Shown: in pieces, positions 13,175 through 45,042 of the stretch | Numbering within the stretch: the first letter of the stretch is position 1 | Layout: every line of letters begins with the position of its first letter | Assembly: GCF_902459465.1 (NCBI RefSeq) | Contig: NC_047074.1 | Location: 6,820,001 to 6,884,000, forward strand | Source: Asterias rubens | Lineage: Eukaryota | Length of the DNA stretch: 64,000 bases | Direction: 5' to 3' | Notes under the pieces: model-generated | Seen by the model: the letters and a program-made list of their open reading frames with translations, nothing else | Told to the model about the DNA's origin: nothing | Database searches by the model: none | Made by a program: the position numbers and the translations under genes

Positions 13175-13388
13175 CTATGGACAACGCCTTAAGTCTGGAT
13201 CTACATCCATACTGCTACTCTTTGACAACAGGAACGCGCCAAAATAACTGCCCGGTCCGTTATCCTTTGTGAAGTAGTGTGAGCCACCTTGTAGAGGGCG
13301 CACTCCAACTCGATCGTTGGCCGCCAAGTAAAATACACCACCGCCATATCCACTATCACCACTCGGTGTCTGCCCAGCATTGGGGGTT
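13175..13388 (-). CDS. TNF ligand B last exon
   Basis: gctgtctacag|A ACC...; TPNAGQTPSGDSGYGGGVFYLAANDRVGVRPLQGGSHYFTKDNGPGSYFGAFLLSKSSSMDVDPDLRRCP*. Confidence 0.92.
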
Positions 13389-16300
13389 CTGTAGACAGCA
13401 ATATGGGGAAATAAATATTATCCATACTGCATCGTTTTATCACTATGCATGGGTATTGTAAAAATTCTATGGAATTTCTTTTTTCCAATCTATGCTAGCA
13501 CCTCATAATCATTACGGTGGCACATTGGTTCATTGTTACTTTAGATCATAGATAGTTTTTACTTTAAATAATTGCACTTGCACTTTTATGGTTACACTTA
13601 CACTTGCAAAGCTCTAGATTCCAGAATAGCGAACTCGTTACCATCGCCACAATCAGGTCTAACCACCACTTCATGGCCTATAAAATTACCTCCTCGTCCC
13701 GCATAGGTGATCTGACTGTACACAAAGTAGTGTCCAGGCAGTTTTATCTGTAATGGTAAACGAAGAATACTTCATCTTATTGACTTATTGCAAATAATCA
13801 AAACAGAACTTACATAATATTGGGAGAAGGCTCTGTAAAAGTGTTGGTAGTTGTTTGCATTTCTTGAAGCTCAGTGTGTCTGATTTTGTTTACTGCTTTA
13901 CACGTGGTTTTGTATAATATAAAAGTAGTAACGGCTTGTAATCCGAACAGTTCAGCTGCACGGTAGTTAAAGGCATTGGTAATTACTCACAATATTTGTT
14001 ATCATAAAACTTACTTGGTATAAAGCAAAGGAGAGCTGTTGATAGTATAAAACATTGTGAGAAACGGCTCTCTCTCTGAAGTAACGTAGTTATGGAGAAG
14101 AAGCTATTTTTCACTTTAATATTTGATTTCGAGAACGCAGAATAAGATGTTGAGGTCACGAAATCAAGCATCTGAAAGCACACAACTTCGTGTGACAAGG
14201 GTGTTTTTCTTCCATTATTATCTCGCAACTTTGATGACCGATTGTGTTCAAATTTTCACATGTTTGTTATTTTGTGCATCAAGTGAGAAGACAGGTATTT
14301 GACAATTGCCATGTTATGGTAGCGTTGTAGTGAGACCTACCTCTATGAATTGGTTGTGCACAAACACCAGGCTCTCGTGTGAGATTCTGCCCAACATTCC
14401 AGTATCACTACTCGTATGAAACGTAAACCAGTTCACTGAAATAGTTACAAAAAAAACATCATCACTAGACAACAATTGTTCCGATCGGTCAAAACGAATC
14501 AGTGCACCTGCCAGGAAAACGTAATTAGTGATAAACACTTTATCTGGTTCCTTTGCGAACCAGTAAAAAAAATACTGGTTTCCATTTGGGCACTGCTTAT
14601 TACATTGTTAAGAACAAACAAATTAACACATTAAGAAGTAAATATACAAATCACATTATAAAAATAACGATTTAGAAGTTGTAAACTAAGCGTAAATATG
14701 TAAGAATCTAAACGGAAAATTAAAAGCAATATAAACAAATAATGAAGAGTACAAAAATCACTAGAGTAAATTTCATAAAAAGAAGGCTTTTAAAAAACAG
14801 ACCAGTTCAAAACAAAATAGACCGGTCCCTGTAATAGACATTCAGGAATTTAAAAAAAGTTGTAATTTAGATGAATGTACAATAATAAAAGGCGGGAACT
14901 GCTGTCAAGAAGTATAAAGCAAATCACAATCTACAGAGTACAAATTAAGCGATTAAGAATAGAAAAGCTCAGTTTTTTCCTCGGACTAACTGGTACCCTT
15001 GCTCACACCGCACGACCCAACCAGTATACACTGTCACATCGCTCAACACCTGTCGTACGACTAATGTGCACAAGTCATCCGCACTCGTACCACTTATCCG
15101 CATGCGGAACCGTGTCCGCATACGGCCTCCGCATTCGGTTGTGCACGGGGGGGGGGGGGTGGTTATACTCATTATACGAACAGTGGTAACCGGTGGGTTT
15201 TTATAGTGGCGGTCTTTTTCGGAGTGAAAGATTCGACTGCCTTGAGCAAGGCTAACTAACTGGCAGATCGTTCCACATTTTGGCAAAGCTTGAGCACAAG
15301 CTTTCTTGAGCACAAGCTTTCTTGAGCCCAAGCTTTCTTGAGCACAAGCTTTCTTGAGCCCAAGCTTTCTTGAGCACAAGCTTTCTTGAGCACAAGCTTT
15401 CTTGAGCACAAGCTTTCTTGACCAACTCTCAGAGTAACATTAACATCTTCCTACCTGTACTTTGTTCCAGATAGTCCTGCTGATTACCGACAACATGAAG
15501 AGAAGGAAGGCCATCCGAGAGAAGCTGATATTAAAACGAACATGACAAGGAGTGCTCATTTAGCTGTTTTGTCTTACATTATTTGTAACATCAAATCTTC
15601 ATCAGCTTCTTTTGTGTGATATGACGGCAAACCGGCACTTAAAAGATTCTCGTCTAATCAGAACTGCCTCTATAGGAACCGGGCAATCTCGGTTGTCTAC
15701 TTGGTAAGACACTGCTCTAGAATTTCAAGAGTTGTGGGTTCGAATCCCACTCGAGATATATGCCTGGGTGTTTTTTTTTACAGGATTTGGGAAAGTGCTA
15801 AGTATACAGTGCTATAACACACATCGGTGTACGGTAAAAACCAAAAACAATATTCTTTATCCCCGATGCAAATTTAACATCTATTATATATAAATATCGT
15901 TGCGGTACCCACTGCCAAAACATATGATTAGAACTGCCTCTATAGCTACCCGGGCAATCTCGGTAGTCTATTAGGTAAGACACTAGAATTGCAAAGGTCT
16001 TGGGTTTAAATCCCACCCGAGTAATATGCCTGTGATTTGCTTTCACAGAGCTCGGGAAAGTACTGAGTATACAGTGCTAACACACACCAGTGTATGGGTT
16101 ACAGCCAAAATTAATATTCTTTATCTCCGATGCAAATTTTAACATATTAATCGCGTATGAACTAACGTTTCATTATGGGTTTAAGCTTTCATTCAAATTA
16201 GAATTCAAAAGCATCGAAAGAGCATGCGGCGTGATACTCTTCTTCTTAATATTTCAGTCTCTCTTCCGATGTTTTGACCTTGTGAATAAATCAGATTTGT

Positions 16301-19300
16301 TTTTACTATAAGGCCTGCAAATTCTACTAAAGCATACACCCCGTTAGTCAGCCTTTGTATACTCAGTGAGACGTTCCTTTCCCCCTTCAAAATCGTACCA
16401 AGTGACAGATTAACTACAAATTATAGTCTATAACTTACCGTATCATAATCGTATGAATACGTATCTGCAGAAATGAAACAGATTTTAAAACAATTCATTA
16501 ATAAAGTACATAATAAAATAGGCTAGAAATACAAATGTGCTCTTCATAGGATGGACGAAGGAACATGTAGCATAAACTGTTTCAAGCCTAGTTGGATAAA
16601 AAAATCCTGTAATGTTGGTATATTGTTGAATTTAAGTGCTGCTAGAATGATTATTACTCAAAATAAAAAAAATATCTATATAAACCTTTCTCATTTTCCG
16701 TATTTACCCCGCCCCCTATCTCCTCGAAAAGCCAAACTTTCCAGGAAGTCCGGCTGGGGTTGGGGGCGGGGGGGGGGGGTATCCTTGATGTCGAACCGTA
16801 AGGTGGCCAACCACCAAGCCGGGTGGTTGCGCAAGCCCACGGGGTCATGGTCTTTGTGGACGCAAAGGGGATTGAGGGTCCAAACATAATCTTACCTGAT
16901 GAGCCACCGACTTGCGCTTGTCTCCTTGATCGCTGTCTTGTATTTAAGTTCACATTGGAATCCTATATTGAAATAAGAACAAGATTAATATTGGACTCAA
17001 GTTCGGACGTCTGAAACAGTCGCCCTTGTTATTGTACACATCTATATAACACAATCATTCTACGGGCATATCTTTGAAGAATGCTTAGATTAATTGGAAT
17101 TTTTGAGTTTTAAGGCCTGTAATGTAAACCATTTGGTGCTTATTTTTGCTATGATACAATATCTGAAAACAACTAAATTACAGCCTCGTATCCATTAGGC
17201 CTATTACGTTTGCATATCCAGTGCTCAGACGGCGTTTCGTCCCAAAAGGGCAGATCTGTCAGGATGGAGCATGCGAGTGTTAACGTCCGGGGAAAATTCT
17301 GCATTCTAACGGTGCAATCTTAAGCCAGTTTATAAAGGCCTATTAACGAAACAGAACACATGCCTTCGAAATTTGAGCAGAAGAATTTTGGCCTTTTGGA
17401 TTTTGGAAAAAATATGTCTAATTGATAGCTTGCAATGTTTGTATACGCAAGGTTTACTGAAAAAGAAAATCTTTAATCACTTTAAAAAAGGAACGAAAGG
17501 ACGGTGACAAATTTGTGTCTGTATTCGCTATTAATAATACCATGTGCTATATTAATAAGGATAAGGACAATCAAATGTAATTCAAAGTTTTGTTTCGTTC
17601 TAATCGTACTTTACAGAGGCTACTCAATCTGTATTAGTTGTCTTCTTCTAACACACCTAATTAATTACTCCTCTCTAATGTAGGTTTTCCCGTTCAATTT
17701 CGGAAAATGAGCGGCCAATTTAACCACCAGCCTCTTCTATTTCGCACGAAATCGAATGCCACTGAAAAGGGTAATTCGATTACTTTTTAAGACTAGTCAA
17801 AGGTACTTTTACGTCATTCGGTTTAACAAAATAATCATTCAATTTAACCATTCATCGAAGCTGCATTCAAATTCGCAGCATTTTTTTGAGGCGTGCGTTT
17901 AGTCATTCAATTTCATTTTGGGCAGTCAATCCTGGAATGTGTGCAATCTTTAAAACGCTTGGTTAACTTTTTGTTTCCTTACGAATGTTAAAGGCATGCG
18001 GATAATTTTTTTGGCACCCTTGAACATATAGGTTTTCTCGGTCAATTTCGGAAAATGAGCAGCCAATTTAACCACCAGCCTGTTCTATTTCGCACGAAAT
18101 CGAATGCTACTAAAAAAGGGTCATTCGATTTCATTTTAAGACTAGTCAAAGCTACTTTTACGTCATTCGATTTAACAAATAATCATTCAATTTAACAATT
18201 CATCGAAGCTGCATTCAAATTCATAGGAATGTTTTTGAGGCGTGTGTTTAGTCATTCAATTTCATTTTGAGGCAGTCAATTCTGATAGTTGTGCAGTCTT
18301 AAAAACGCTTGATTAACTTGTTGTTTCCTTATACGAATGTTAAAGGCATGCGGTTAATGTTTTGGCACTCTTGAACATAATATGCCAAGATGTCTGGGCA
18401 CGCCAACAGATGGTTGGTGAATATTTACCAAAAACAACAACTGGAAAAACATTCAAACCCCCCCCCCAAAAAAAAAAAAAAAAAACCAAAACAAAAAACC
18501 ATTCAAACACATTCAAATGTCAGGTCTTGGTCAGTTAACCATTGATGGTCTCCCGAAAAAAATAAAGAAGAAAACAACCCTTATGGGGCCCAAGGTAAAG
18601 TCTACTGGAAACATAAAATAAAGAAAATAAATTTTAATTTTTTTAAAGATTGATTGTTCAACTCGACTTCGCCTTTTTGAAGGGAGCATTCCATCTTGAA
18701 CCTGTGAAGGTACGAAACGGTTTGCCTCATACAGTTTTTCTGTTTACTCATATTTCTTTAGTCGTACTTATTTGAATCCCCGGTGAGCGAAATTGACTGC
18801 CTCTTTACGAAATTGAAAATGATTTAATCAGCAAAATCTCTAGTCGAACCAGCTTTGCGAAATTGAATGATGATTGTGTGTCATGAAAAAAAAATGAGTG
18901 TGCTAGGAACTTGAATGCCTCAAAACGAAATTGAATGACCGAATTCTGAATTTGAAACGCAGTAAAAACCGATAACTATGAGGCGAGCTTTATGAACTTT
19001 TACTTAAATTGCCATAACGATTAAATATTGATGCCCATGCGGGACACAGTACAAAACTTTAGCTTTATGATGAAATTTGTCAAAAACAGGAAGGGGGGGG
19101 GGGGGCGAGGGGAACATAATGTCCCAACTCTTCACCCCCACCTTTTTGGGGGACCGGGGGTGGGGGATCTGTCAACGATGGAACATCCAGACGTGAAGTT
19201 TTTCCGAAAATTGTGCACTTTAGATGCACTGTGTGGTGCAATCTTATGCCAATTTGAGGGGGGACATTTGATATTGTGGTGTCCCATCACCCAACAGTTG

Positions 19301-19855
19301 GTGGGGGATCATCCCCCTGTGCCCCCCCCCCCCCTCGATTGACGCCCATGATAAGTAACCTTCGAATACAGAGGTGGTGGCGGACTACCCAGGGCTGCTT
19401 TATTCTCGCTCCTGTCCAGCATGCACAGCACAGCCAATATTTTACGTGTAGGACCTACTTATTTAAAGTTGATGATGGAAATTATCTTACCCATTTTAAA
19501 GCCACCGGTGAACATACCGTAAAGAAAATCAAATGTAACTTACTTGAATAATTTCATCTTCTGCTTGTTGGGTTGGCTTATGTTGATCATCACGCCAATC
19601 GATACCTCCCATCCGTGTGTTCTCATTATGCAACCGGGCAAGATCATACCTGAGTTGAACTACTTGTACGATTAACCAAATAACGGCTGTAAAGGAAACT
19701 ACGTGAAGGAGAAGACTCGTGTATGATATTTGAAGTCGGCTCGCTTGTGTGTGTTTCGAATCTTCAACATGTCCGTTGGTAGTCTTCTCTCCAGTTGCTG
19801 TATCTTCAGGTACATAACATGCTTCCACATTGCCATTGATGTAAGATGATGCCAT
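13175..19855 (-). CDS. TNF superfamily ligand B (conventional TRAIL/RANKL/CD40L/FasL-like class), type II membrane, 318 aa. Exons 19855-19544, 16962-16896, 16464-16439, 15479-15455, 14507-14341, 13747-13602, 13388-13175
   Basis: Seven GT-AG exons total 957 nt in one frame. TM segment (SLLLHVVSFTAVIWLIVQVV), coiled coil, furin site RQRSRR, TNF motifs VNW, IKLPGHYFVYSQITY, SGYGGGVFYLAANDRVGV, SYFGAFLL. Confidence 0.88.
13602..13747 (-). CDS. TNF ligand B exon 6
   Basis: ccattacag|ATA...CAAGT|gtaagt; IKLPGHYFVYSQITYAGRGGNFIGHEVVVRPDCGDGNEFAILESRALQV. Confidence 0.92.
13967..14310 (+). mobile_element. MITE family A copy
   Basis: Family sequence, degenerate ends. Confidence 0.8.
14341..14507 (-). 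CDS. TNF ligand B exon 5 (strand A to B)
   Basis: ctaattacgttttcctggcag|GT...GAG|gtaggt; GALIRFDRSEQ...VNWFTF...LVFVHNQFIE. An in-frame alternative acceptor lies at 14435. Confidence 0.75.
15287..15421 (+). repeat. Tandem 16-bp repeat (cttgagcacaagcttt), about 8 copies
   Basis: Directly visible; explains the LKKACAQE-type repeat in ORF 14969..15409. Confidence 0.9.
15455..15479 (-). CDS. TNF ligand B 25-nt micro-exon
   Basis: taatcag|CAG...ACAG|gtagga; QDYLEQST; phase 0 to 1 restores the frame. Confidence 0.65.
15655..16150 (+). mobile_element. Two tandem copies of a tRNA-derived SINE (about 15655-15900 and 15925-16150); third copy about 37500-37620
   Basis: A box (gtctacttggtaagac) and B box (ggttcgaatccc) followed by a shared non-tRNA body. 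Confidence 0.75.
16439..16464 (-). CDS. TNF ligand B 26-nt micro-exon
   Basis: tttcatttctgcag|AT...ACG|gtaagt; DTYSYDYDT; phase 1 to 0. Confidence 0.75.
16896..16962 (-). CDS. TNF ligand B exon 2 (furin site)
   Basis: tatttcaatatag|GAT...TCAG|gtaaga; DSNVNLNTRQRSRRQAQVGGSS. Confidence 0.8.
17681..18380 (+). repeat. Tandem duplication of an approximately 350-bp element
   Basis: taggttttccc...ggcacccttgaacata repeated (about 17681-18030 and 18029-18380). Confidence 0.85.
19544..19855 (-). CDS. TNF ligand B exon 1 (cytoplasmic tail, TM, coiled coil)
   Basis: catcATGG start; ends CAA|gtaagt; matches ORF track 19529..19855. Confidence 0.85.
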
Positions 19856-20101
19856 GATGCTTTTTAAAGATGTCTATCGAGTGAAGGCTGCTAGGAATAA
19901 TACTGTCATGAGAATTGTTCCACCAAATATATAGGCCTACGCTCAAGATGTGAAAACGATTTTAACATCTCTAAATGAAATGTGCGTGTTTCCAAAAAAA
20001 GATTTGAGATTACAAAATATGGTAATCTCTGAGAGAGAAAGTGACTTTGCTTTGATATGAAGTAATTTACACAGAGCGAAGTTCCATTGGATGTAAGATA
20101 C

Positions 20102-20113
20102 GGGGAATTACCC
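20102..20113. promoter_or_regulatory. kB-like site upstream of TNF ligand B
   Basis: GGGGAATTACCC, one mismatch to GGGRNWYYCC, about 250 bp upstream of the ATG. Confidence 0.35.
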
Positions 20114-21099
20114 GATTTGCGGCAGAGCATGTTCCAATGCGCGTTAAGCAATCGATACTAAACTGATGTGCTGCCGAGTCGCTACATCAAGATTGCACAT
20201 GCACTGGGTCGAGTTGACAACCAGCACGGGACATGAACACATCAGATTCAACACACCATAATGGGAGGAGCGACTATTGTACACAAATGGCCCCGTATTA
20301 TGAATAACGTATACTACGGAGTAATTCTGAGCAACGATGTAATTCACTGAAAAATAAACATCAAATTGATATGTTCCCCGGTTTTCTAATAAACTTACAA
20401 GGGCTTATTTTGAGATGTGATAAGCTCGTTATCTTATGTTGCCAGTTTTTTTTTGATCTGCTATTTTAGTTGTCAATCTTTATTATGTATACAATGTATA
20501 ATCAAAGGCATATGTTTGTCGATAAATTGAATAGTATCGTCATTTTTATATATTTTTTTCTCTTGATGTGGAGTTATACTACTCCGTTTATTCAACAACA
20601 AACATCAGCAACAACATACATCAATAAAACAAGACTAATAAATACTGCTATTAAATAACAGATACAATGAGCTACAGGAGGTAATACAAAGGTATTTATT
20701 CTTTTATTTATTCATTTATGTAATTTATCTCCAGTGATAACTATGTACAATCATCTTCCATAACTTTAACAGAGATACACATAGATCAATACATACAAAA
20801 TGATAATTAAAATTACAATGAACAAATGGTGATATTACATACCAAACAACACGAACATCAACACACGATAAAAAAAGTAAATTTAAGTACATCGTAGAAA
20901 ACGATTAACTTAAGACGACAGTAAAAGGACAGTAACTGTTAATTTATTTATTTATTTTTCTCTTTTTAAAATATTTTTTTTGATCATTTCTATTTTTGTA
21001 TTTATTTATATACAAATATACTTTTTAAAATAATTATAATTTTTTAGGAGTAGGCTGATTGATGTATCGAACCATTCCATTTTGTTAATTTGTTCGATT

Positions 21100-21450
21100 T
21101 TTTTTAAGCCAAGGGTTCATGACCTCCAATGGTTAACGCCACTGTAGAGACTATAGGAAAAAATACAATAATTATTAATAGTGTCCAGTGCCTTTTATAG
21201 TTAACCAACCTTAAACTGTCCGCTTCTCGACTCATTTATGAGACGATGTCCAGCAACAAATACAACAGTGTTTGAAAGTTCGAGCACCTGTAATGGCGAT
21301 GTTATTATCAGGGACTGTGTTGGTTTCTGCTTTATCCAAATTCGAACGTTCTTCCGTAATCGCATAAATTTCCACAAGCAACGCTGTAGTCTTGACCAAA
21401 ATATTGAGTTTTAGAAAATATTAAAAGCATTGCACTCGTGTTGTGTAATA
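21100..21450 (-). mobile_element. Degenerate LINE (CR1/L2-like) 3' remnant
   Basis: Broken frames with FSYS...W-like end-of-RT motifs and an A-rich tail further left. Weak. Confidence 0.3.
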
Positions 21451-22038
21451 GAGCCGTGTATACAGCTAGTATAGGATGTGATTGCAAACAAATTCATAGA
21501 CCAATAACATCGATGTTTTATTTATTTGAATTTCCTCTTGCATCATGTGGTTAATCTAATACTGTACGAAAGTCCTATCTAGAAAAGGAAGGACTAGACA
21601 CTGCAACGCAATAGTCTTCGCCATAATACTAAATAAGACACGGCACTAGTTTTGTAAAGGAAATCATTTATCTATGTTCATGGTGATGTAATTTTCTGCT
21701 TTAGGTCGCAAACAATTTCGCAATATTTCACATGGCTAATGATGGTACAGCAATGTCAAGGAAGAGCTGTGCGATGCTTCTATAGCTGCGGTCAAAATTA
21801 CGACCATTTGGCTGCTATAATACAAGTTCGTATTATAAGTATTGTATATATAGAGATAGTGTTTCATTTTGTATTATTTACGAGTGATGTCGTTTTTTAA
21901 GGTGTATACCGGTTTAGAGACTGACGGTTGCAAAAATGAGTATGACGATTGCAAATTTAATTTCAAGACCTCTGCAAGATTGTTATCATACCTTGCTTAT
22001 TTATTTTGTTCACAGGTCCGGACAAATGATAATTTTTT

Positions 22039-22344
22039 TTCAAAGACACTGGACACTACTGGTAATTGTCAAAGACCTGCTTGGTGTATCTCAACGTATG
22101 CATAAATTAATAAACCTATGAACATTTGAGCCCAATTTGGTCGTCGAAGTTGCGAGATAATAATGAAAGAAAAAAAAAATCTAATTATGAGGTCTCGAAA
22201 TCAAATTCGTTGAAAATTACTTCTTTCTAGGAAACCACGTTACTTCAGAAGGAGCCGTGTCTCACAATGTTTTATACTACCAACCTCTCCCCATTACTCG
22301 TTACCAAGTAAGGTTTTATGCTAATAATTATTTTGAGTAATAAC
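22039..22344 (-). mobile_element. MITE family A copy, internal deletion
   Basis: Family sequence. Confidence 0.8.
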
Positions 22345-23451: not shown

Positions 23452-23790
23452 AATTATTACTCAAAATAATGATTAGCAAAACCTTATACTTGGTAACGAG
23501 TAATGGAGAGTTGTTGGTAGTATAAAACCTTGTGAGAAACGGTCCTCCCTTAAAAGTGACGTAGTTTTCGAGAAAGAAATAATTTTCCACGAATTTCGTT
23601 TCGAGACCTCAGAGTTAAATGTTGAGGTCCCGAAAACGAAGCATCTGAAAGCGCACAACGTCGTGTGACAAGGGTGTTTTTCTCCCATTATTATCTCGCA
23701 ACTTCGACGACCAATTGAGTTCAAATTTGCACAGTTTTTGTTTTTTGCATGTTGAGATACACATAGTGAGATGACTGGTCTTTGACATCT
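23452..23790 (+). mobile_element. MITE family A copy (partial)
   Basis: Family sequence. Confidence 0.75.
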
Positions 23791-34400: not shown

Positions 34401-37400
34401 GCTACCAAATGATAACAACCAATAGTATTAGCATACATGCGCTGTTTGTTTATTGTTGACTAACATTTAGAGAGATTTGATTTCTCACAATAATTTGTCT
34501 GACAAGCTTTCAAAATAGAAACAGTTCTTGAAACAAATGTGAATCAAATGTCAGAATTTATGAATTTGAATTATTGATCAAACTTTTGATACATTGCAAA
34601 ATTAATTATGACCAATATTTGTTCTTACCAATCCCGGTCATATCTATTTGCCCCCCCCCCCCGCCCCATTCAATGTAGGTGCTGATTGCACGGTCTTCTG
34701 CATTCCAGTCAACATTTGGGAGCTTTCGTTTTCGACGACGGATATTCCTGCGACGGTAGGTAGTTTACAGCCAAACGTTGTCGTTTTCAGCACAACGCAG
34801 ATTCATCCCATGTACCGTCGTAAGAAATTGAGGGCGACCGTTCTGCATGCGCAGATGACGCCAAACGTCACCATTACCGTCGCAGAACCACCCGTCGTCC
34901 AAATTGGGGGGACGGGGGTCGGGGAGAGAATGATTTGTCAGTGAGAAGTGTATGTGGAATGGTTTTTTATAATGTTAGGAACGGGTGGCCTAAGCACTTT
35001 GGCCGGGATTGTGGATCTCTATAACCCCTTCCCAATGCGCTATACAAGAATTAGCTATTAGTATTATTAATATTATTATTATTTTGTATATTGATCTATA
35101 AACATGATGATTTGATACAAACTTACTTTCCACGATTGCAGGGGATTCAACATCTCCTTCAAAATGAGCAGAGAGTATCACTGAGTATTGATGGGGCTAA
35201 AGGGTTTTAAACATTATACAATAGTTACCATTAGACATATAGAAACTGTGTGTCAGCACTAAGGTCATTCTACTAAAGACCGCGGCCAAAATACTAGATA
35301 TGATTCACAATAAATGCCGTGCACACAGGAAAAGCACACCGAGAGGCATCGTCCACTATCATGTTATTAGAACAGGCGAAAAGGAAGCAATATACCACAC
35401 TGATTGTTTGTATGCAGTTAAAGTCTCCTTGCATAAACCACGAAGTGTGTCATTTTAAAGGAACACATTGCCTTGGATCGGTCGGGTTGGTCTTTGAAAA
35501 ACGTTTGAAACCATTTATTATGAAATGCAAAAAGTTGGACATGCACTGGTTTTCCTTTTACGCCGCGAAGAAACACGGTCGGCCATTGTGTGGAGTCAAT
35601 TTTTGGCTCAATAAAATGGCCGACAGTGTGAGTTCGCGACGTTATAGAAAAAAACGTGCAATTTCGAGTGATACTTGTGTGGATCATTATATCCTTATAC
35701 TTTTTATAAAAAAACATCTTTCTATGCATTTCATAACAAACGGTTTCAAATTCAAACGCTTTTCAAAGACCAACTCGTCCGATCCGAGGCAACGTGTTCC
35801 CTTTAAGACGTGCTCGAGTAAATCGGGTACCTAAATTTAAAAATAGTGTACGTATCCACTGCGCCTCAGATCAAGAATTATAAAATGACTTACTCTGATC
35901 ATGTTCGCTGTTTTGTTTAAATAATGATGTGTATGTGAAACCAGCATTTTGACTCGATCGTCTAAAAGAATGAACTTAGGTGACACACGTTTTCAATCGA
36001 CTTACTTTCACTAGTGTTGATGGTAGCATATCTGCCTCCCTCAAAGTGTGCCGCAAGTAACGCTGGCCATACAAGCTGTCCTGCGCCCTGTACACCAGGA
36101 CACGAAAGCGAGTCAAGTTTCAACTTATCAGGCGCACAGTGGATACTTAAAGGCAGTGGACACTATTGGTAATTACTCAAAATATTTATTAGCATAAAAC
36201 CTTACTTGGTAACAAGTAATGGGGAGAGGTTGGTAGTATAAAACATTGTGAGAAACGGCTCCCTCTGGTGTAGTTTCCGAGAAAGAAGTAATTTTCCACG
36301 ATTTTGATTTCGAGACCCCAGATTTAGAATTTGAGGTCTCGAAATCAAGCATCTGAACGCACACAACTTCGCCTCACAGGGGTGTTTTTTCTTTCATTAT
36401 TAGCTCGCAACTTCGACGACCGATTGAGCTCAAATTTATACACAGGTTTGTTATTTTATGCATATGTTGAGATACACCAAGTGAGAAGACTGGTCTTTGA
36501 CAATTACCAATAGTGTCCAGTGTCTTTAAAGGTAGGATCATAGTTTGGTAGAGAACCCAGAACAGAAACCACGGTATTTACTAAAAAAAGAACTGCTTTA
36601 AAGATGGCAATGAAATCAAGCATCCTCCAAAATTATTTTGTTATAGAAGTTGATAACAAAAATAGCAAACAATTATTACAGATGCTATGTCAGATTTGTT
36701 GCCGATTTGACCCCAAAAATTTGATTTAAAATTCAATAGGTATTTTGATGGGGGTCGAGAAAGTTACAAGCTTTCATTTGAGCCATTGCTCGAAAAAGTC
36801 CGCCAATTATAAGTAGCAGTGAAATAAAGTGCTCAAAATTAGTTTTTGTCGGGATCCCGACAATATATCACGTCACCTATTCTTGATAAGAAACGTTTTA
36901 AATTTTTGTCATGGTTCCTGACCATTAAAAGTAAAAATTACACTTTTTTTCGTTAGAGCGGGTGATACTCTTTGAAATACCATTCACTCAAAAAAATATT
37001 TTTTTAATGTTTGGGGCCAAAAATCTGACATAGCATCTTTAACGTTTAATAGCATCTTTAACGAAGATCGCCCGCAGGCGACTTTAATTTCGAGGGTGTC
37101 CGTGTGAAGCGCTTAATACAGAGAGCGATGCGGTTGGTACCCGCTATCGAAAAGGCGTTACGGTGACGAAATTCAAACGCTGAACAAAACAAAATGAATC
37201 GCGAATATACAGGGTGCGTTCGATTAGCTTCCCTGTATCGACCCCGCGGTGCTCACTCGGGTGAGCCCCTGACAAGAGCAAATTGAACGACCCCTCACCC
37301 TCTCGTGGTGACGTCATGCGCCTCGGGCCAGCCCCAAGTGACCCGTTCCACAAGCAGTGCACTTTGACCCGGGTGAGCCCCTGGAATTAATTCAAAGCTA

Positions 37401-40400: not shown

Positions 40401-43400
40401 TACCCATTGTGTAGGCTCATTTTACAAAAATGTCACAATTTAGGATACCCCGGATGGACAGAAAGATTATTTTACGGTAGCGTGTATATATGATTCGTTT
40501 CTTTCTGTTTTTGTTTTGTTTCCAAGCAAAGAGATGTTCACCAGCTGCACACACCACCGCTGGTTTAGTTTGTATGGACATTTTTCAATAGGGACAATAG
40601 GCCCTCACTAGTCGGTACTTTGTTTTCATGGGTCCTCACTAGTCTTTTGTGTTTAAAACTAATCGGGATTGCTTCAATACAGGAACACCAGAAAGTACAA
40701 CAGGTGTTCTCTAACGTAATGGGCAAACACGACTGCGCGTGTGTGGTGTTTCTTACCATCAACGACGTCACGGGGTCATTATACATCAATGTCATAGATT
40801 AAGCAGTTTTTGACTTCCGACTGATAAGCCGCGCAAAGAGGTGCATTTTTGCTTTCAATTCTGTATTACTAAAAATTAATACAAAAATGTTAAATTAAAA
40901 ATAGTTAACCGGTATCTACGATGCCTACTCAACCATGCCAAGGTTATAATAAATAAATTATTAAGAGCATTTTAAACGAATTACACCCGGCTTTTTAAAA
41001 GCCGGGTGAAATTAATAGGTTTGTTCTGAGGATTAAAGGTTTGTTATAAGAAATGCTGTTTATAAACTATAAAAATGGGGAATTTTTCGTAACATTGCAC
41101 ACATTAAAAGCATGTCCACTTTGCAGCCTTAATAGAAGTTGCAAAAACTGTGGGTGTACAGCAGACTAGAAACGCTCGCGTGTGACGCAATGACTGACCT
41201 TGTTTAGCGTCACACGTGTGCGTGTCTGTTGCACTCCGAGATTTCGCTACTTCCGGCTCCGAAGTTTACTTCGTTCTTCGGATGGGACGTAAAGCCGTTG
41301 GTCCCATGTGGTGTGTAACGCATGTAAAAGAACCCAGCATTTATCGAAAAGAGAAGGGGGTTCGCCCCGGTGTTCCTGGCTGTGGCTGCTAAATGCGCCG
41401 TAGCACCTTGTAAACCCTTATTAATATAAGGTGCCAAACAATTGGGTCTCGGAATTCATCACTGCAATAACCTATCTTTCTGGAAGTGTGTATATACTCA
41501 GCGCCTTGAGTACCTTGTTTGGTAGACGGTGCGCTATATAAGACTTTGATATTATGAATAAGATGTGTTTGAATTACCTGTGTGCCCTGACGAGGAGTAG
41601 TTGAGTCAGTCGTGGTAGAGTGTTCACATTCCCCTGGAGGGCCTGCAAAGGCAATACGAAACCTCTCAAAATGAGCTTGTCACTATGACCAGCAATATAC
41701 CTTTATCGCGGTGTGGTCATCTTGATTTTACTCCATTCCAGTTCATTGTAACCAAACCGAGGCTGGACGAAATAATAGTCTGGTTCCATGCGCTATGTTA
41801 GCATTTATTACTGTTATTGGAAACAGGGAACATGACCAAGATGGTGACAGCGTGGTAAATGTCTATTATATTGGAAGTTTTAATAGCGGTGCATCTTAGA
41901 CCTATAGACCTTTATCACGGTGCCTCCATCGTGGTCATGTTCCTCGTATCGATAATGAATAACAATAATGAACGCTATTTTTCATTTTGAAAATAGGAAC
42001 CAGACTCTTTTTCTTCCAGCGTCGGTTTGGTAACATTGACTTCAATGGTAGAAATTCAAGATGGCTGCACCGTGATAAAGGTCTACATGTATATGCTCAT
42101 ATCACAACAATTGATTATGAGTACGAGAAATTAGGATTTGAAAACAGTGGACACTATTGGTAATTTTCAAAGACTAGTCTTCACAGTTGGTGTATCTCAA
42201 CATTTGCATATTAAAAATAACCAACCTGTGAAAATTTGAGCTCAATCGGTCAACGAAGTTGCGAGAAACAATAATGAAAGAAATAAAAACACCCTTGTCA
42301 CACGAAGTTGTGTGCTTTCTGATGCTTGATTTCGAGACCTCAAATTCTAAACTTGAGGTCTCGAAATCAAATTCGTGGAAAATTACTTCTTTCTCGAAAA
42401 CTATGTCACTTCAGAGGGAGCTGTTTCTCAACCTCTCCCCATTACACGTAATCAAGAAAGGTTTTATGATGATAATAATTTTGAGTAACTACCAATAGTA
42501 TCCACTGCCTTTAAGTCCTCGACATTATTCCGAGCTTTCCCGACTTTTCATGACGAAGGTTTACTCGTAACACAAACATTGCCATTTTGGAGAAGTGAAA
42601 GGTGTATAATAACCAGTCACCAGTGTTACATTAGGATGATGTCAACATTTAACTTAATATAGTATGTTTTGTTTGTTTGAATGATCTTCCCATTCAGGGA
42701 ACTCGGCAAACTCCCACAAAGGGATATAAACACCAAGCTGGCAACAGCCAATCTCTCTCATACAAACTTGATTATGAATTACACAAATCCAGAAATTGTG
42801 ATTCAGTATCTAGACGACAATATTTATTCTAGTCATTGTGAAATCAGCGGTTAGCTTGGGGGATTCGAACCCACAACCTTGTGATTGCAAGTTCTGCAGT
42901 CTAACCACTTGATCACGGTGACTGTAGTATAAGATAAATGTAGTCGCAATAGGACCCGGCATTACGGTGTGTACGTTGTAGACCTATACCACGTACCTTG
43001 CTCTCCAACGCGACCTAAAGAAAAAAACACAATGATCAAATAACAGCTTCATAATAATATAAAGTATTCTATTCAGAAATTAAATCAGAAAGAATAACTT
43101 TATATCCCAGAATAGTGGCATAAACGCACTCCAGTGGCAAAATGCCCCTGGTTCTACTTTCTATTTATATCCTCAGCTATAATTAAAGGCAGTGGACACT
43201 TTTGGTAATAGTAATTACTAAAAATAATTATTAGCATAAAACCTTACTTGGTAACGAGCAATGGAGAGCAGCTGTTGATGGTATAAAATATTGTGACAAA
43301 CGACTCCCTCTGAAGTAACGACGGTAGTTTTCGAGAAAGAAGTCATTTTTCACGAAATTGATTTCGAGACATCACAATTAGATTTTGAGGTCCCGCAAGC

Positions 43401-45042
43401 AAACATCTAAAAAGCACACAACTGCATGTGACAAGGGTGTTTTTTCTCCCATTATTATCTCTCAATTTCGACGACCAATTAAGCTCAAATTTCCACAGGT
43501 TTGTTTTTTTATGCATATGTTGAGATGTCCGGAGTGAGAAGAATGGTCTTTGACAATTACCAATAGTGTCCAGTCTTTAAAACCCATCTTGTCTATGATG
43601 ACCCCCCCCCCCTATGATTGTATGTACTTTAGGCTTCTCACCCCTGTGACCTCGTTCTCCTTTTGCTCCCTTTTCCCCTCCAAAAGACGTACGTCCAGGC
43701 TCACCTTTTTTACCTTTCACAAATGAAACGAAACTACAATTAACACATTAAAGCACAATATTAAGAAATTTCTCATTAATATTGGAAAAACATTATATAT
43801 TTGGTTTGCGGTAACACCATTGTCTGTATCTACTTGCCAGGTAGAGTTTGTTCTTAGAGAACTGTCTTTCTTTATTCTACTACCGCTGAGTAGATTAATC
43901 GGATGTTCGGGAGACTTCTCAGTTCTGAAAAGAACTGTCCTGCTTTTTAACTACTACCCTGGTGGAAGGTATAGAAAACTCGCTTGGGCTGAAAGATACA
44001 CAAAAACTCGTGCATACCTTTGCATCTTTTGCATGCTTTTCGTCCTTCTGTAATACAAAGGAAATATCAGACAATAAAGGTACGTTTAATGTGTGATTAC
44101 ATAATGACAGAATACAAGAGAGTACGTTGAACAAAATGAGCAATTAAGCAAGCTAGACAACATACCTTTATCGCGTTGGTTACGGGTTGATCGGAAGGTC
44201 CGAAGATGAAAATCATCCTTTTCTTCTGATCTTGCTTTTTCCTGACAACATACAAGAACGATTATCAACACAACGAGGGTTTAAAGGCAGTGGACACTAA
44301 TGGTAATTAGGGAGCTGTTGATAGTATAAAACTATGTGAGAAACGGCTCCCTCTGAAGTAATGCAGTTTTCGAGAAAGCAGTATTTTTCCACGAATTTGA
44401 TTTCGAGACTTCTGACTTGATTTTGAGGTCTCGAAATCAAGCATCTGAAAGCACACAACTTGTGTGACAAGGGTGTTTTTTGTTCATTGTTATCTCGCAA
44501 CTTCGACGACCAAATTGAGCTCAAATTTTCACAGGTTTGTTATTTTATGCATATGTTGAGATACACCAAGTGAAAAGAATGGTCGTTGACAATTACCAAC
44601 AGTAATGCGCTATGGTACTAATTCTACCTCCATCATACTACCGTGCGCAACTTACCTCCGTGACTCTGTCGCCTTCTATGAAGGCACCATCATCACCCTT
44701 AGCCTTTCTGTCTCCAAAGACCTCTGCATCAAGTGCTCCTTGATTTACGGAGTTTGGAGGCAAATCACTGGTAGATAGCCTTCTGGCAACATGATCACCG
44801 TCAGTCTTCATTGGATTGTGTTCCTTTTTATTCAACTTCCATTGTATATTCTCCAGCACCAGATGCAGGTTTCTGTTCTGTATTTCAAGAATGCTAATTC
44901 TTGATTCCTGAGCTCTCAGGACTGAATGTAAACTACTGATTTCGCTTGATGACTGGTTTACAATTACGATCATGCCGACTAGTCCACAGCTCACCAAGCA
45001 GGCGACGACTAAGCCTAATTGCCAACTTCGTTGCTCCTGCAT
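28222..45042 (-). CDS. EDA: Ectodysplasin/Eiger-like TNF ligand A (EF-disulfide class), type II membrane with collagen segment, 343 aa. Exons 45042-44656, 44241-44166, 43713-43642, 41642-41578, 35196-35127, 30193-30069, 28458-28222
   Basis: Seven GT-AG exons total 1032 nt in frame. TM, coiled coil, furin motif RTFRSTR, Gly-X-Y run GKKGEPGRTSFGGEKGAKGERGHRGPPG, TNF motifs SAHFEG, GGIYYVYSQ, FSCTEC...NTCYIGG, HFGLIKL. The symbol means EDA-like; orthology is not tested. Confidence 0.85.
28605..28946 (-). mobile_element. MITE family A copy
   Basis: Family sequence. Confidence 0.8.
29235..29742. mobile_element. Two adjacent copies of a MITE (TIR ctgggtccaatttcatagcgctgct); fragments also at 54620-54885
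   Basis: Repeated TIR motifs in both orientations. Confidence 0.65.
30069..30193 (-). CDS. EDA: TNF ligand A exon 6
   Basis: ttgtttaag|GT...CAG|gtagga; GWVPYWKYADWMDSDVRSRFILGQTGNVTVTEGGIYYVYSQ. Confidence 0.92.
31409..31786 (-). mobile_element. MITE family A variant subfamily
   Basis: ttaaaggga...ccctttaa, variant core. Confidence 0.8.
31897..31936 (+). repeat. Short degenerate telomere-like (TTAGGG) tract
   Basis: ggggttaggggttgggtttgggttagggttaggttagg. Confidence 0.7.
32530..32655 (+). repeat. Tandem approximately 31-bp repeat, 4 copies
   Basis: gctctattgtgactcaattgcagaaa... Confidence 0.8.
32783..32975 (+). repeat. Tandem approximately 40-bp minisatellite, about 5 copies
   Basis: gttggaaccaacattgaaagggggcaggagggccacacga; no variable spacers. 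Confidence 0.85.
33790..34075 (+). mobile_element. MITE family A variant, degenerate
   Basis: Recognisable internal motifs (gagaaacggctccctctgaag). Confidence 0.6.
35127..35196 (-). CDS. EDA: TNF ligand A exon 5 (strand A)
   Basis: acccttag|CCC...GAAA|gtaagt; PHQYSVILSAHFEGDVESPAIVE. An alternative acceptor at 35180 would not fit the upstream phase. Confidence 0.75.
35455..35806 (+). mobile_element. MITE family C copy
   Basis: ttaaaggaacac...gtgttccctttaa. Confidence 0.8.
36147..36529 (+). mobile_element. MITE family A copy
   Basis: Full length, TTAA flanks. Confidence 0.85.
37212..37456. mobile_element. MITE family E copy
   Basis: TIRs intact. Confidence 0.8.
38560..38820 (-). repeat. 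Dispersed repeat; inverted copy at 63850-64000 (possible LINE 3' end)
   Basis: ggcataaacaagtacaaacaaatacattatccattt matches 63878 onward. Confidence 0.6.
41255..41555 (+). mobile_element. DeuSINE-like (Deu/Nin domain) SINE, 5'-truncated
   Basis: ttcggatgggacgtaaagccg...gtaaaagaaccc...agggggttcgccccggtgttcctgg plus gcgctatataa tail resemble the Deu-domain consensus from memory. Confidence 0.6.
41578..41642 (-). CDS. EDA: TNF ligand A exon 4
   Basis: cctttgcag|GC...CAG|gtaatt; GPPGECEHSTTTDSTTPRQGTQ. Confidence 0.75.
41904..42087. mobile_element. MITE with TIR tagacctttatcacggtgc; related fragments at about 39545-39660 and 41700-41830
   Basis: tagacctttatcacggtgc ... gcaccgtgataaaggtcta. Confidence 0.65.
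42139..42514 (-). mobile_element. MITE family A copy
   Basis: Family sequence. Confidence 0.85.
42630..42925 (-). mobile_element. tRNA-derived SINE; body fragment also at about 46790-46905
   Basis: Minus strand: A box (caagtggttaga), B box (ggttcgaatccc), then body ttggctgttgccagcttggtgtttatatccc shared with 46800. Confidence 0.65.
43183..43580 (+). mobile_element. MITE family A copy
   Basis: TTAA flanks. Confidence 0.85.
43642..43713 (-). CDS. EDA: TNF ligand A exon 3 (collagen, 72 nt, phase 1-1)
   Basis: tttgtgaaag|GT...AGGG|gtgaga; Gly-X-Y repeats. Confidence 0.8.
44166..44241 (-). CDS. EDA: TNF ligand A exon 2 (furin motif)
   Basis: tgttgtcag|GAA...AAAG|gtatg; EKARSEEKDDFHLRTFRSTRNQRDK. 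Confidence 0.8.
44281..44600 (+). mobile_element. MITE family A copy (intron 1 of TNF A)
   Basis: Family sequence with an internal deletion. Confidence 0.8.
44656..45042 (-). CDS. EDA: TNF ligand A exon 1 (signal anchor and coiled coil)
   Basis: caaccATG start with in-frame stop upstream; ends GAG|gtaagt. Confidence 0.85.

What the first reader, a model, noticed from the sequence alone, without database searches (positions are those of the whole stretch)
13175..45042. Tandem TNF ligands from the two major structural classes: EDA/Eiger-like next to TRAIL/RANKL/CD40L-like
Seen: two co-oriented type II TNF genes 8.4 kb apart. Gene A has a collagen segment, the C...NTCY EF-disulfide pattern and an intron right after YSQ. 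Gene B has no collagen, no EF cysteine pair, a GGVFYLAANDRV...SYFGAFLL end and different TNF-domain intron positions, so this is not a recent duplicate. Established: vertebrate TNFSF splits into EF-disulfide (EDA, BAFF, APRIL, TWEAK) and conventional groups, and members of both share chromosomes (EDA and CD40LG on X; TNFSF13B and TNFSF11 on 13). Inference: this may preserve an ancestral deuterostome two-class TNF cluster, and read-through chimeras like TWE-PRIL are structurally possible.
Basis: partly seen in the sequence, partly recalled or inferred. Interest (0 to 1): 0.75.

Follow-up and report, generated by a model that had tools for sequence, protein, structure and literature searches.

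The report
Starfish EDA-like and conventional TNF pair
Two neighbouring starfish genes encode TNF-family signalling proteins of two anciently separated classes, and because the same pair sits side by side in other starfish and a brittle star it is a useful, though not yet decisive, outgroup test of the published idea that the whole TNF family grew from one early two-gene tandem.

Summary
The window is Asterias rubens (LR699104.1). Gene A (45042-28222, minus strand) is the NCBI gene LOC117298882, "ectodysplasin-A-like". It has a membrane anchor, a basic cleavage region, a short Gly-X-Y stalk and a TNF domain with the EF cysteine pair. Its best solved relatives are APRIL, EDA and BAFF. Gene B (19855-13175, minus strand) is LOC117298864. 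It has no collagen and no EF cysteines, and its intron positions differ from A's.

A maximum-likelihood tree and an AU test (p = 3.6e-7) reject a lineage-specific duplication. A groups with hemichordate, amphioxus, urchin, crinoid and mollusc EDA-like genes. B groups with Ciona TNFSF-T1a and mammalian LIGHT.

The label "TRAIL/RANKL/CD40L-like" for B is not supported. TL1A and LIGHT score about 10 bits higher.

The A-then-B order on one strand recurs in Acanthaster, Patiria and Amphiura. It was not seen within 10 kb of the nearest EDA-like gene in a crinoid, an urchin or a hemichordate, which is inconclusive.

An ancestral two-class tandem is already proposed for chordates (Collette 2003; Marin 2020, 2025, 2026). 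This pair extends that idea to echinoderms. A-to-B chimeras are phase-compatible, but no evidence for them was found.

The scan has no earlier report of this pair on other DNA.

The parts
44656..45042 (-). Gene A (LOC117298882, ectodysplasin-A-like), coding exon 1. Holds the ATG at 45042, a short cytoplasmic tail, the membrane anchor (residues 10-28) and the stalk. It ends in phase 0.
   Evidence: Exact spliced mapping of P0052 and P0053. Hydropathy maximum of 2.75 at residues 10-28.
47451..47482 (-). Alternative 5' coding exon of gene A, used by isoform X9 (P0001). That isoform lacks the membrane anchor.
   Evidence: P0001 maps at 100% identity.
44166..44241 (-). Gene A exon 2 (76 nt), encoding EKARSEEKDDFHLRTFRSTRNQRDK, a basic RxxR-type cleavage region. 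Including it after exon 1 puts the next exons into the collagen frame.
44018..44047 (-). Gene A cassette exon (30 nt), encoding the basic, cysteine-containing motif EGRKACKRCK. It is skipped in isoforms X5 and X6.
   Evidence: P0052 compared with P0053.
43642..43713 (-). Gene A collagen exon, encoding GKKGEPGRTSFGGEKGAKGERGHRG.
   Evidence: Pfam Collagen 23.6 bits in isoform X2. The frame is conserved in Acanthaster P0003.
42997..43014 (-). Gene A 18-nt micro-exon that adds two Gly-X-Y triplets (RVGEQG). Present in isoforms X2, X5, X7 and X13.
   Evidence: Located with ag/gt flanks. Isoform sequences.
41578..41642 (-). Gene A exon encoding GPPGECEHSTTTDSTTPRQGTQ: the end of the collagen segment plus a Thr-rich linker.
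36006..36087 (-). Gene A alternative A-strand exon E6 (82 nt), encoding GAGQLVWPALLAAHFEGGRYATINTSE. It is mutually exclusive with E7.
   Evidence: Used by P0053. X13, which includes both E6 and E7, ends early. E6 and E7 are both conserved in Acanthaster and Patiria.
35127..35196 (-). Gene A alternative A-strand exon E7 (70 nt), encoding PHQYSVILSAHFEGDVESPAIVE.
   Evidence: Used by P0052.
33211..33258 (-). Gene A cassette exon (48 nt), encoding RWDPINRGYVDLSDFDG. It is skipped in isoform X7.
   Evidence: P0098 compared with P0099.
30069..30193 (-). Gene A TNF-domain exon ending ...GGIYYVYSQ, followed by a phase-0 donor.
   Evidence: Pfam TNF hit.
28222..28458 (-). Gene A last exon (MLYYDPS...FSCTEC...FNTCY...FGLIKLS plus stop). 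It carries the EF cysteine pair.
   Evidence: APRIL 3.6e-13, EDA-A2 1.4e-11.
19856..28221 (.). Intergenic 8.4 kb between A and B. It is repeat-rich and no gene is called in it.
   Evidence: Called-gene list for L002, which is identical to the window.
19544..19855 (-). Gene B (LOC117298864) exon 1. Holds the ATG at 19855 and the membrane anchor (residues 48-66). It ends in phase 0.
   Evidence: Exact mapping of P0049. Hydropathy.
16896..16962 (-). Gene B exon 2, encoding DSNVNLNTRQRSRRQAQVGGSS with a furin-type RSRR site. Its acceptor is in phase 0.
   Evidence: RxRR is conserved in the B-family alignment.
16439..16464 (-). Gene B 26-nt micro-exon, encoding the acidic, Tyr-rich DTYSYDYDT.
15455..15524 (-). 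Gene B exon 4, the start of the TNF domain (LPSLHVVGNQQ).
14341..14435 (-). Gene B exon 5 (NWFTFHTSS...FVHNQFIE), ending in phase 0 just before the C strand.
13602..13747 (-). Gene B exon 6 (IKLPGHYFVYSQ...PDCGDG...SRALQ).
   Evidence: An RNA-run contig piece matches exactly 13602-13747 (record 24).
13175..13388 (-). Gene B last exon (...GGVFYLAANDRVGVRP...SYFGAFLL), with a 16-residue tail that ends in a cysteine, plus the stop codon.

Best explanation
The window holds two functional type II TNF-superfamily ligand genes of Asterias rubens, head to tail on the minus strand.

Gene A is the asterozoan orthologue of a bilaterian EDA-type gene, the EF-disulfide class that Marin calls 'V22-like'. 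Its parts, in order, are a membrane anchor, a basic cleavage region, a short interrupted collagen stalk and a TNF domain. Cassette and mutually exclusive exons diversify the stalk and the first strand of the TNF domain.

Gene B is a conventional ligand of the lineage that holds tunicate TNFSF-T1 and vertebrate LIGHT/TL1A/FasL/TRAIL-type genes. Its parts are a membrane anchor, an RSRR furin site, an acidic Tyr-rich micro-exon and a TNF domain without the EF cysteines.

Shown here:
- The two genes separated before the deuterostome radiation.
- Their adjacency, order and orientation date back at least to the common ancestor of starfish and brittle stars.

Inferred:
- The pair is a surviving copy of the early 'class 1 - class 2' tandem from which Collette and Marin derive all chordate TNFSF genes. 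It is not a secondary juxtaposition.
- Each protein is presumably shed by a furin-type protease and acts as a trimer on its own TNFR-type receptor.

The confidence given is for the whole statement, including the inferred ancestral-tandem step. The shown parts alone I hold at about 0.9.
For: - The window is identical to A. rubens LR699104.1, and the NCBI proteins map exactly.
- Pfam TNF scores 41.8 bits for A and 34.8 bits for B.
- A against solved structures: APRIL 3.6e-13, EDA-A2 1.4e-11, BAFF 2e-9, all conventional ligands above 1e-3, with the EF cysteines aligned.
- The profile of B and its relatives: TL1A 5e-9, LIGHT 6e-9, TRAIL 4e-6, EDA 2e-4.
- Tree: the A clade sits inside a 100/99 EDA-like clade with hemichordate, amphioxus, urchin, crinoid and mollusc genes. 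The B clade groups with Ciona TNFSF-T1a (98/96, 89/84) and with LIGHT.
- The AU test rejects A+B as one clade, p = 3.6e-7.
- P0047 is Marin's TNFSF-T1a, confirmed by matching sequence motifs in the paper's supplement.
- Synteny, A followed by B on one strand: Acanthaster with a 19.8 kb gap, Patiria with 13.8 kb, Amphiura with 28.5 kb.
- B's exons, and not its unique intron stretches, are covered in four public runs.
- The published models place one class-1 and one class-2 gene in tandem before the vertebrate genome duplications (PMC11762692, PMC12843592).
Against: - The adjacency was not found within 10 kb downstream of the most similar EDA-like gene in Antedon, Diadema or Ptychodera.
- No B-type gene from urchins, crinoids, hemichordates or amphioxus was retrieved at all.
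- In the starfish the EDA-like gene is upstream. In human 17p13 TWEAK is upstream of APRIL (established knowledge), so the order differs.
- B resembles V11 genes (LIGHT, TL1A) more than V12 genes. In the 4G model V11 is paired with V21, not with the EDA class.
- No vertebrate EDA, BAFF, APRIL, TRAIL, RANKL or CD40L sequences could be put in the tree.
- 8.5 kb of the Amphiura interval was not seen.
Confidence: 0.55

Rival explanations
1. Secondary juxtaposition. A and B are old paralogues that were brought together, or kept together only, in the asterozoan stem lineage. On this reading the adjacency says nothing about the deuterostome ancestor.
For: - No B-like exon lies within 10 kb of the EDA-like gene in a crinoid, an urchin or a hemichordate.
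- The gene order is the reverse of human TWEAK-then-APRIL.
- Tunicates keep no T1 - T2/T3 tandem (PMC12843592).
Against: - Paralogues mostly arise in tandem.
- Chance adjacency of two of the handful of TNFSF genes in a genome is rare.
- Vertebrates show the same class-1 / class-2 pairing twice (PMC11762692).
- The negative look-ups covered only 10 kb, and the orthology of the genes examined is unresolved (polytomy).
Confidence: 0.35
2. Lineage-specific tandem duplication of one echinoderm TNF gene, followed by fast divergence of copy B. This is the refutation case named by the first reader.
For: The genes are adjacent and co-oriented. Both have YxVYSQ and GGV motifs.
Against: - The AU test rejects A+B as one clade, p = 3.6e-7.
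- A has closer relatives in hemichordates, amphioxus and a mollusc. B has closer relatives in Ciona and mammals.
- The TNF-domain intron positions differ.
- The two TNF domains are only about 28% identical over 75 residues.
Confidence: 0.02
3. The pair works as one transcription unit that makes TWE-PRIL-like fusion proteins: the anchor and stalk of A joined to the TNF domain of B.
For: - Donors of A after exon 1, after the collagen linker exon (41578) and after YSQ (30069) are in phase 0.
- The acceptor of B exon 2 (16962) is in phase 0.
- The genes are on the same strand, 8.4 kb apart.
Against: - Among the A. rubens isoforms of A retrieved here (numbered up to X13), none contains exons of B.
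- B has its own start codon and membrane anchor.
- The read-laying test was swamped by repeats and gave no chimeric joint.
Confidence: 0.08

Closest known systems
Vertebrate ectodysplasin-A (EDA) and its relatives APRIL and BAFF (Marin's EDA cluster, or V22 genes)
   Same: - Type II membrane topology.
- A basic cleavage region followed by an interrupted Gly-X-Y stalk and then the TNF domain.
- The EF-loop cysteine pair aligns with that of EDA and APRIL.
- These are A's best solved relatives.
- Alternative splicing alters the TNF domain. EDA-A1 and EDA-A2 differ by two residues and bind different receptors (PMC8685516).
- The intron after YSQ lies where, from my own knowledge, the A1/A2 difference sits.
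   Different: - The collagen stalk has only 9-11 triplets, against 19 in EDA.
- A third cysteine is present (CTEC).
- The variable part is the first strand, made from mutually exclusive exons, plus a 16-residue cassette. It is not a two-residue donor shift.
- Orthology to EDA itself, as opposed to the whole EDA/APRIL/BAFF group, was not resolved. The receptor is unknown.
Tunicate TNFSF-T1 (Ciona intestinalis TNFSF-T1a, XM_002127900.5), with vertebrate LIGHT and TL1A (V11 genes)
   Same: - Nearest chordate relatives of B in the tree and in the profile search.
- No EF disulfide.
- Shared motifs: GYYFVYSQ, IGHE, DSGY-GGVFYL, VGVRP, SYFGAF.
   Different: - B has a C-terminal tail ending in a cysteine and a PDCGDG cysteine that Ciona T1a lacks.
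- B has a furin site followed by an acidic Tyr-rich micro-exon.
- The V11 versus V12 affinity was judged only by scores, not by a tree.
Human TNFSF12 (TWEAK) - TNFSF13 (APRIL) tandem and its TWE-PRIL read-through
   Same: - A conventional-lineage gene and an EDA-cluster gene lie head to tail within a few kilobases.
- The splice phases would allow an in-frame fusion.
   Different: - The order is reversed: in the starfish the EDA-type gene is upstream.
- B is not TWEAK-like.
- No chimeric transcript is known here.
Collette (2003) and Marin (2020, 2025, 2026) model of an ancestral TNFSF tandem (the '4G hypothesis')
   Same: The model predicts an early tandem of one class-1 and one class-2 gene. 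The starfish pair is such a tandem.
   Different: - The model was built on chordates only, and the tunicate paper does not mention echinoderms or hemichordates.
- The starfish pair combines a V11-like partner with a V22-like partner, a combination that is not one of the two chordate tandems.

Membership tests
TNF ligand superfamily (both genes) | TNF homology domain above the Pfam PF00229 gathering score | tested here: met
   A scores 41.8 bits and B scores 34.8 bits against a cut-off of 23.
TNF ligand superfamily (both genes) | Type II topology: one N-terminal hydrophobic anchor with the TNF domain at the C-terminus | tested here: met
   Hydropathy maxima at A residues 10-28 (2.75) and B residues 48-66 (2.36). 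The TNF domain is at the C-terminus in both.
TNF ligand superfamily (gene B) | Jelly-roll fold of the TNF domain | tested here: met
   AlphaFold model with pLDDT 66.6 and pTM 0.69. Foldseek matches TRAIL, TNF, LIGHT, TL1A and EDA at about 1e-7, with TM by target 0.64-0.81. The model is of moderate quality.
EDA / APRIL / BAFF class (gene A) | Cysteine pair that forms the E-F disulfide | tested here: met
   FSCTEC...FNTCY aligns column for column with the APRIL FRC...NSCY and EDA LQC...NTCY cysteines.
EDA / APRIL / BAFF class (gene A) | Closer in sequence to this class than to conventional ligands | tested here: met
   APRIL 3.6e-13, EDA-A2 1.4e-11 and BAFF 2.4e-9, against the best conventional ligand at 1.3e-3.
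EDA proper (gene A) | Collagen-like Gly-X-Y stalk between the cleavage site and the TNF domain | tested here: met
   3 + 8 triplets with one three-residue break in isoform X2. The Pfam Collagen score of 23.6 bits is below the 27.2 cut-off. Some isoforms read these exons in another frame.
EDA proper (gene A) | Forms a clade with vertebrate EDA to the exclusion of APRIL and BAFF | not tested
   No vertebrate EDA, APRIL or BAFF sequence could be retrieved into the session. A is only shown inside a 100/99 clade of invertebrate genes that NCBI names EDA-like.
EDA proper (gene A) | Intron at the site of the EDA-A1/A2 splice difference | tested here: inconclusive
   A has a phase-0 intron after YSQ. 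EDA-A2 aligns without a gap across it, and EDA-A1 spans two more residues over the same aligned stretch and scores lower. The human exon map itself was not available.
TRAIL / RANKL / CD40L group, V12 (gene B) | Closer to these ligands than to other conventional ligands | tested here: not met
   Profile scores: TL1A 39.2 bits, LIGHT 39.1, TRAIL 29.8, FasL 29.2, CD40L 21.5. RANKL is not among the 60 rows shown.
Conventional ligand lineage with tunicate TNFSF-T1 (gene B) | Forms a clade with TNFSF-T1 and lacks the EF cysteines | tested here: met
   Clade with Ciona T1a at 98/96 and 89/84. Identity of P0047 with XM_002127900.5. No cysteine between strands E and F.
Two-class TNFSF tandem (as TWEAK-APRIL) | One conventional-lineage gene and one EDA-class gene adjacent on one strand | tested here: met
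   Asterias 8.4 kb, Acanthaster 19.8 kb, Patiria 13.8 kb, Amphiura 28.5 kb.
Two-class TNFSF tandem (as TWEAK-APRIL) | Same gene order as the vertebrate tandem (conventional gene upstream) | tested here: not met
   The EDA-like gene is upstream in all four asterozoans. The human order, TWEAK then APRIL, is from established knowledge and not from a tool.
Two-class TNFSF tandem (as TWEAK-APRIL) | Read-through fusion transcripts | tested here: inconclusive
   The phases allow a fusion. No retrieved isoform shows one. The contig laying was swamped by repeats.
Ancestral deuterostome cluster | Adjacency present outside Asterozoa | tested here: inconclusive
   No B-like exon within 10 kb downstream of the EDA-like gene in Antedon, Ptychodera or Diadema.

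The most novel reading that the evidence does not exclude
The asterozoan A-B pair is the unduplicated descendant of the primordial 'class 1 - class 2' TNFSF tandem. On this reading, the duplication-plus-transposition that produced the four ancestral chordate genes (V11-V21 and V12-V22) happened on the chordate stem, after the split from Ambulacraria. That would explain why B looks like V11/T1 while A looks like V22/EDA. It would also make starfish a living model of the two-gene founder state of the TNF ligand family.
Probability: 0.25. Interest if true: 0.65.

Novelty: new member of a known kind. Interest (0 to 1): 0.45.

Why it matters
[quoted passage not shown] The later papers infer an ancestral two-gene tandem from chordate data alone.

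A conserved echinoderm pair made of one EDA-class and one conventional-class gene gives an outgroup in which that inference can be tested directly, with chromosome-scale synteny and a complete tree.

It also gives an invertebrate EDA-type gene whose receptor-facing first strand is swapped by mutually exclusive exons. This parallels the EDA-A1/A2 receptor switch and could be tested by binding assays.

Both genes are already annotated and the idea itself is published. The gain is therefore a supporting data point and a test system, not a new kind of biology.

Tried and rejected
1. A merged two-sequence profile of the last exons of A and B, searched against 1.8 billion representatives. It found orthologues of both genes but only 48 hits, and no vertebrate ligand.

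2. Word-indexed homologue searches. For B the only vertebrate hits were mammalian LIGHT. This is biased by shared words such as SYFGAF, so it was not used as evidence on its own.

3. A full tree with vertebrate orthogroups. It was not done. The only source of those sequences was printed text (PDB alignments and the supplement of PMC12843592), and long sequences were not typed into scripts.

4. Foldseek with the model of B. All TNF ligands scored alike, so it gave no class assignment.

5. Laying RNA-run contigs on 13590-19589 at 90% likeness. Interspersed repeats filled the tables of joints and loose ends. Only exon-restricted coverage and one exact exon-6 piece could be read off, with nothing on chimeras.

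6. Ten-kilobase flanks of EDA-like genes in Antedon, Ptychodera and Diadema. No B-like exons were found.

7. A search for the Norrin-like and sugar-transporter neighbours in the flanks of the Acanthaster, Patiria, Amphiura, Antedon and Ptychodera loci. None were found within 10 kb.

8. The weak tblastn hit FNHCFVGGIVK at 6057-6025 (E above 1) was dismissed as chance.
Full report
**Identity of the window.** A locus fetched through a homologue (L002; Asterias rubens GCA_902459465.3, LR699104.1, 6.82-6.85 Mb) is 100% identical to window 29855-3175. The window is therefore the common starfish, and both genes are already annotated by NCBI. Gene A is LOC117298882, 'ectodysplasin-A-like', with isoforms numbered up to X13. 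Gene B is LOC117298864, 'uncharacterized protein', 309 aa (P0049).

**Checking the observation.** The annotated proteins were mapped back to the window, requiring exact translation and GT-AG introns.

Gene B has seven coding exons: 19855-19544, 16962-16896, 16464-16439, 15524-15455, 14435-14341, 13747-13602 and 13388-13175.

Gene A in isoform X4 has nine coding exons: 45042-44656, 44241-44166, 44047-44018, 43713-43642, 41642-41578, 35196-35127, 33258-33211, 30193-30069 and 28458-28222. Other isoforms use:
- an 18-nt micro-exon at 43014-42997;
- an alternative exon at 36087-36006;
- an alternative 5' exon at 47482-47451.

The distance from the stop of A to the start of B is 8.4 kb, and no gene is called between them. 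Both proteins exceed the Pfam TNF threshold (41.8 and 34.8 bits against 23). Both have a single N-terminal hydrophobic anchor.

- the Gly-X-Y run in A, 3 + 8 triplets with one break;
- the cysteines that align with the EF disulfide of APRIL and EDA;
- the phase-0 intron right after YYVYSQ;
- in B, no collagen, no EF cysteines, and introns at other places in the TNF domain, namely phase 0 before the C strand and phase 2 in ALQ/V.

One qualification applies. Some annotated isoforms (X9 = P0001 in A. rubens, X5 = P0002 in A. amurensis) skip the 76-nt exon and include both alternative A-strand exons. They therefore read the 'collagen' exons in a different, non-collagen frame. The collagen frame is the one conserved in Acanthaster, Patiria and Amphiura.

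**What each gene is.** The TNF domain of A matches these solved structures:

| Match for A | E-value |
|---|---|
| APRIL | 3.6e-13 |
| EDA-A2 | 1.4e-11 |
| EDA-A1 | 3e-10 |
| BAFF | 2e-9 |
| insect Eiger | 1e-7 to 1e-6 |
| every conventional ligand | above 1e-3 |

B alone matches only weakly: LIGHT 1e-3, TL1A 0.07 and TRAIL 0.17. A profile built from B, its starfish and brittle-star orthologues and two Ciona genes gives:

| Match for the B profile | E-value |
|---|---|
| TL1A | 5e-9 |
| LIGHT | 6e-9 |
| Eiger | 1e-6 |
| TRAIL | 4e-6 |
| FasL | 6e-6 |
| BAFF | 1e-5 |
| EDA | 2e-4 |
| CD40L | 1.4e-3 |

RANKL is not among the 60 rows shown. B is therefore a conventional ligand, but the label TRAIL/RANKL/CD40L-like is not supported.

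An AlphaFold model of B's TNF domain (pLDDT 66.6) matches all TNF ligands about equally. This confirms the fold but not a subclass.

**Phylogeny.** I built a 35-row maximum-likelihood tree (LG+C20 by PMSF, 164 columns).
- The four asterozoan A genes form one clade (98/99). It lies inside a 100/99 clade with the Saccoglossus, Ptychodera, Branchiostoma, Diadema, Strongylocentrotus, Lytechinus, Antedon and Gigantopelta (mollusc) genes, several of which NCBI names ectodysplasin-A-like.
- The asterozoan B genes form another clade. It joins a second Amphiura TNF gene, then two Ciona genes (98/96, 89/84), then mammalian LIGHT.
- The Ciona intestinalis gene is Marin's TNFSF-T1a (XM_002127900.5). I confirmed this by finding its sequence motifs in the paper's supplement. 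Marin places T1 with the vertebrate V11/V12 genes, nearer to V11.
- Forcing A and B together costs 47 log-likelihood units, and the AU test rejects it (p = 3.6e-7).
- A. rubens has a second B gene 3.7 Mb away (P0005, LOC117298590). It is sister to the window's B (97/93) and has no TNF neighbour within 10 kb. It is a recent duplicate of B alone.

**Synteny.** The A-then-B arrangement on one strand recurs in three other species:

| Species | Record | Gene A | Gene B | Gap |
|---|---|---|---|---|
| Acanthaster planci | DF978626.1 | 36446-50618 | 70405-77454 | 19.8 kb |
| Patiria miniata | JADOBP010000008.1 | 11846158-11832949 | 11819106-11807731 | 13.8 kb |
| Amphiura filiformis | CM076860.1 | 52714538-52742140 | 52770648-52775060 | 28.5 kb |

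In the two starfish no gene is called between the pair. In Amphiura 8.5 kb of the interval was not seen, and a further B-related gene lies 4 kb downstream of B. The pair therefore dates at least to the common ancestor of starfish and brittle stars.

For the most similar EDA-like gene of the crinoid Antedon, the urchin Diadema and the hemichordate Ptychodera, the 10 kb downstream hold no B-like exon. This is inconclusive for three reasons.

**Comparison with what is known.** The idea that TNFSF genes descend from an early tandem of two different genes is old: Collette 2003, as summarised in PMC11762692.
- Marin (2020, PMC7674686) traced the EDA and CD40L clusters to one pre-duplication chromosome.
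- Marin (2025, PMC11762692) inferred two ancestral tandems, V11-V21 and V12-V22, with TWEAK-APRIL as a surviving V12-V22 adjacency.
- Marin (2026, PMC12843592) extended this to tunicates as the '4G hypothesis': one gene, a tandem duplication, then duplication and transposition of the tandem.

The tunicate paper does not mention echinoderms or hemichordates, and my literature searches found no report of the echinoderm pair. The starfish pair is thus a new instance that fits the first step of that model.

Two details do not fit simple conservation of the vertebrate V12-V22 tandem:
- The EDA-type gene is upstream in the starfish, whereas TWEAK is upstream of APRIL in humans (my knowledge).
- B looks more like V11/T1 than V12.

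Both details would be expected if the ambulacrarian pair predates the duplication of the tandem. That is the most novel reading, and I give it about one chance in four.

**Chimeras.** Donors of A after exon 1, after 41578 and after 30069 end in phase 0, and the acceptor of B exon 2 is in phase 0. An in-frame fusion that keeps B's furin site and whole TNF domain is therefore possible on paper. None of the retrieved isoforms of A contains B exons.

The single read-laying run used assembled contigs and a 90% threshold, and it was flooded by interspersed repeats. It showed only two things. B's exon bins are covered in four runs while unique intron bins are empty. One contig piece ends exactly at the borders of exon 6. 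The question of chimeras stays open.

**Mechanism (inferred).** A should be a membrane-anchored trimer, released at the basic RSTR/RNQRDK region. In Acanthaster this region is a clearer RRRQR site. The released form would be held together by the short collagen stalk. Splicing changes three features:
- a basic Cys-containing cassette (EGRKACKRCK);
- the number of collagen triplets;
- the first strand of the TNF domain.

B should be released at RSRR. That would expose an acidic Tyr-rich stretch ahead of a conventional TNF domain whose lone PDCGDG cysteine may pair with the C-terminal cysteine. The receptors were not examined.

**Verdict.** The two-class reading is confirmed, with B renamed. The ancestral-cluster reading is plausible and now testable, but it is shown only for Asterozoa. 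The genes are annotated and the idea is published, so interest is moderate.

Noticed in passing
window 36087-36006 and 35196-35127 (minus strand); L006 16207-16263 / 16498-16563; L007 14611-14667 / 14901-14960: Gene A has two mutually exclusive exons of 82 and 70 nt, both 1 mod 3. Each encodes a different version of the first TNF-domain strand (LLAAHFEGGRYATINTSE or ILSAHFEGDVESPAIVE). Isoform X13 includes both and ends early. The exon pair is conserved in Acanthaster and Patiria but appears as a single exon in Amphiura and Ptychodera. It may be a receptor-specificity switch comparable to EDA-A1/A2.
   Followed up: partly
window 44047-36006 (minus strand), isoforms P0001 (X9) and P0002 (A. amurensis X5): Four consecutive exons (30 + 72 + 65 + 82 nt) are read in two different frames in annotated isoforms. 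One frame gives the cleavage site, the collagen stalk and the A strand. The other gives an unrelated 83-residue stretch, and it stays open in both Asterias species. It is unclear whether this is real dual coding or an annotation by-product.
   Followed up: partly
L008 35509-35745, 37620-37757, 38301-38543, 39710-39967; L009 29107-29352 and 29632-29865: The EDA-like genes of Amphiura and Antedon carry several tandem copies of the last TNF-domain exon. This suggests alternative 3' exons that would swap the C-terminal half of the domain.
   Followed up: no
L005 18653-24140: Amphiura has a further divergent conventional TNF gene (335 aa) 4 kb downstream of its B orthologue. In the tree it joins the B clade on a long branch (90/77).
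   Followed up: partly
L001 (A. rubens LR699104.1, about 3.13 Mb): A second copy of gene B (LOC117298590, 73% identical overall and 82% in the TNF domain) lies 3.7 Mb away on the same chromosome, next to a gamma-tubulin complex gene. No A-like exon lies within 10 kb of it.
   Followed up: partly
window 58686-58997 (+), window 1-7248 (-), L009 1-450: The neighbours of the pair are a Norrin-like cystine-knot gene (Pfam Cys_knot 8e-5) and a nucleotide-sugar transporter (Pfam 3.6e-33; an Atlas lead points to SLC35A5). COG3 lies next to the Antedon EDA-like gene. From memory, the human counterparts lie on X, 3 and 13, three of the four chromosomes that carry the EDA and CD40L clusters. This is a macro-synteny lead and has not been tested.
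   Followed up: partly
window about 50000-51900: A GC-rich tandem repeat (GC 0.58), open in several frames (PYRCRCHWPW... / GNGIGNGRGNA...), lies between gene A and the Norrin-like gene.
   Followed up: no
window, many copies (for example 13975-14280, 28690-28930, 36150-36530, 42140-42520, 44310-44570): An interspersed repeat of about 250-390 bp occurs more than fifteen times in the window. Its ORF fragments read KLRDNNGRKTPLSHEVVCFQMLDFETSNSK. It reaches assembler depths near one million in the RNA-type runs, which drowned the read-laying test.
   Followed up: no
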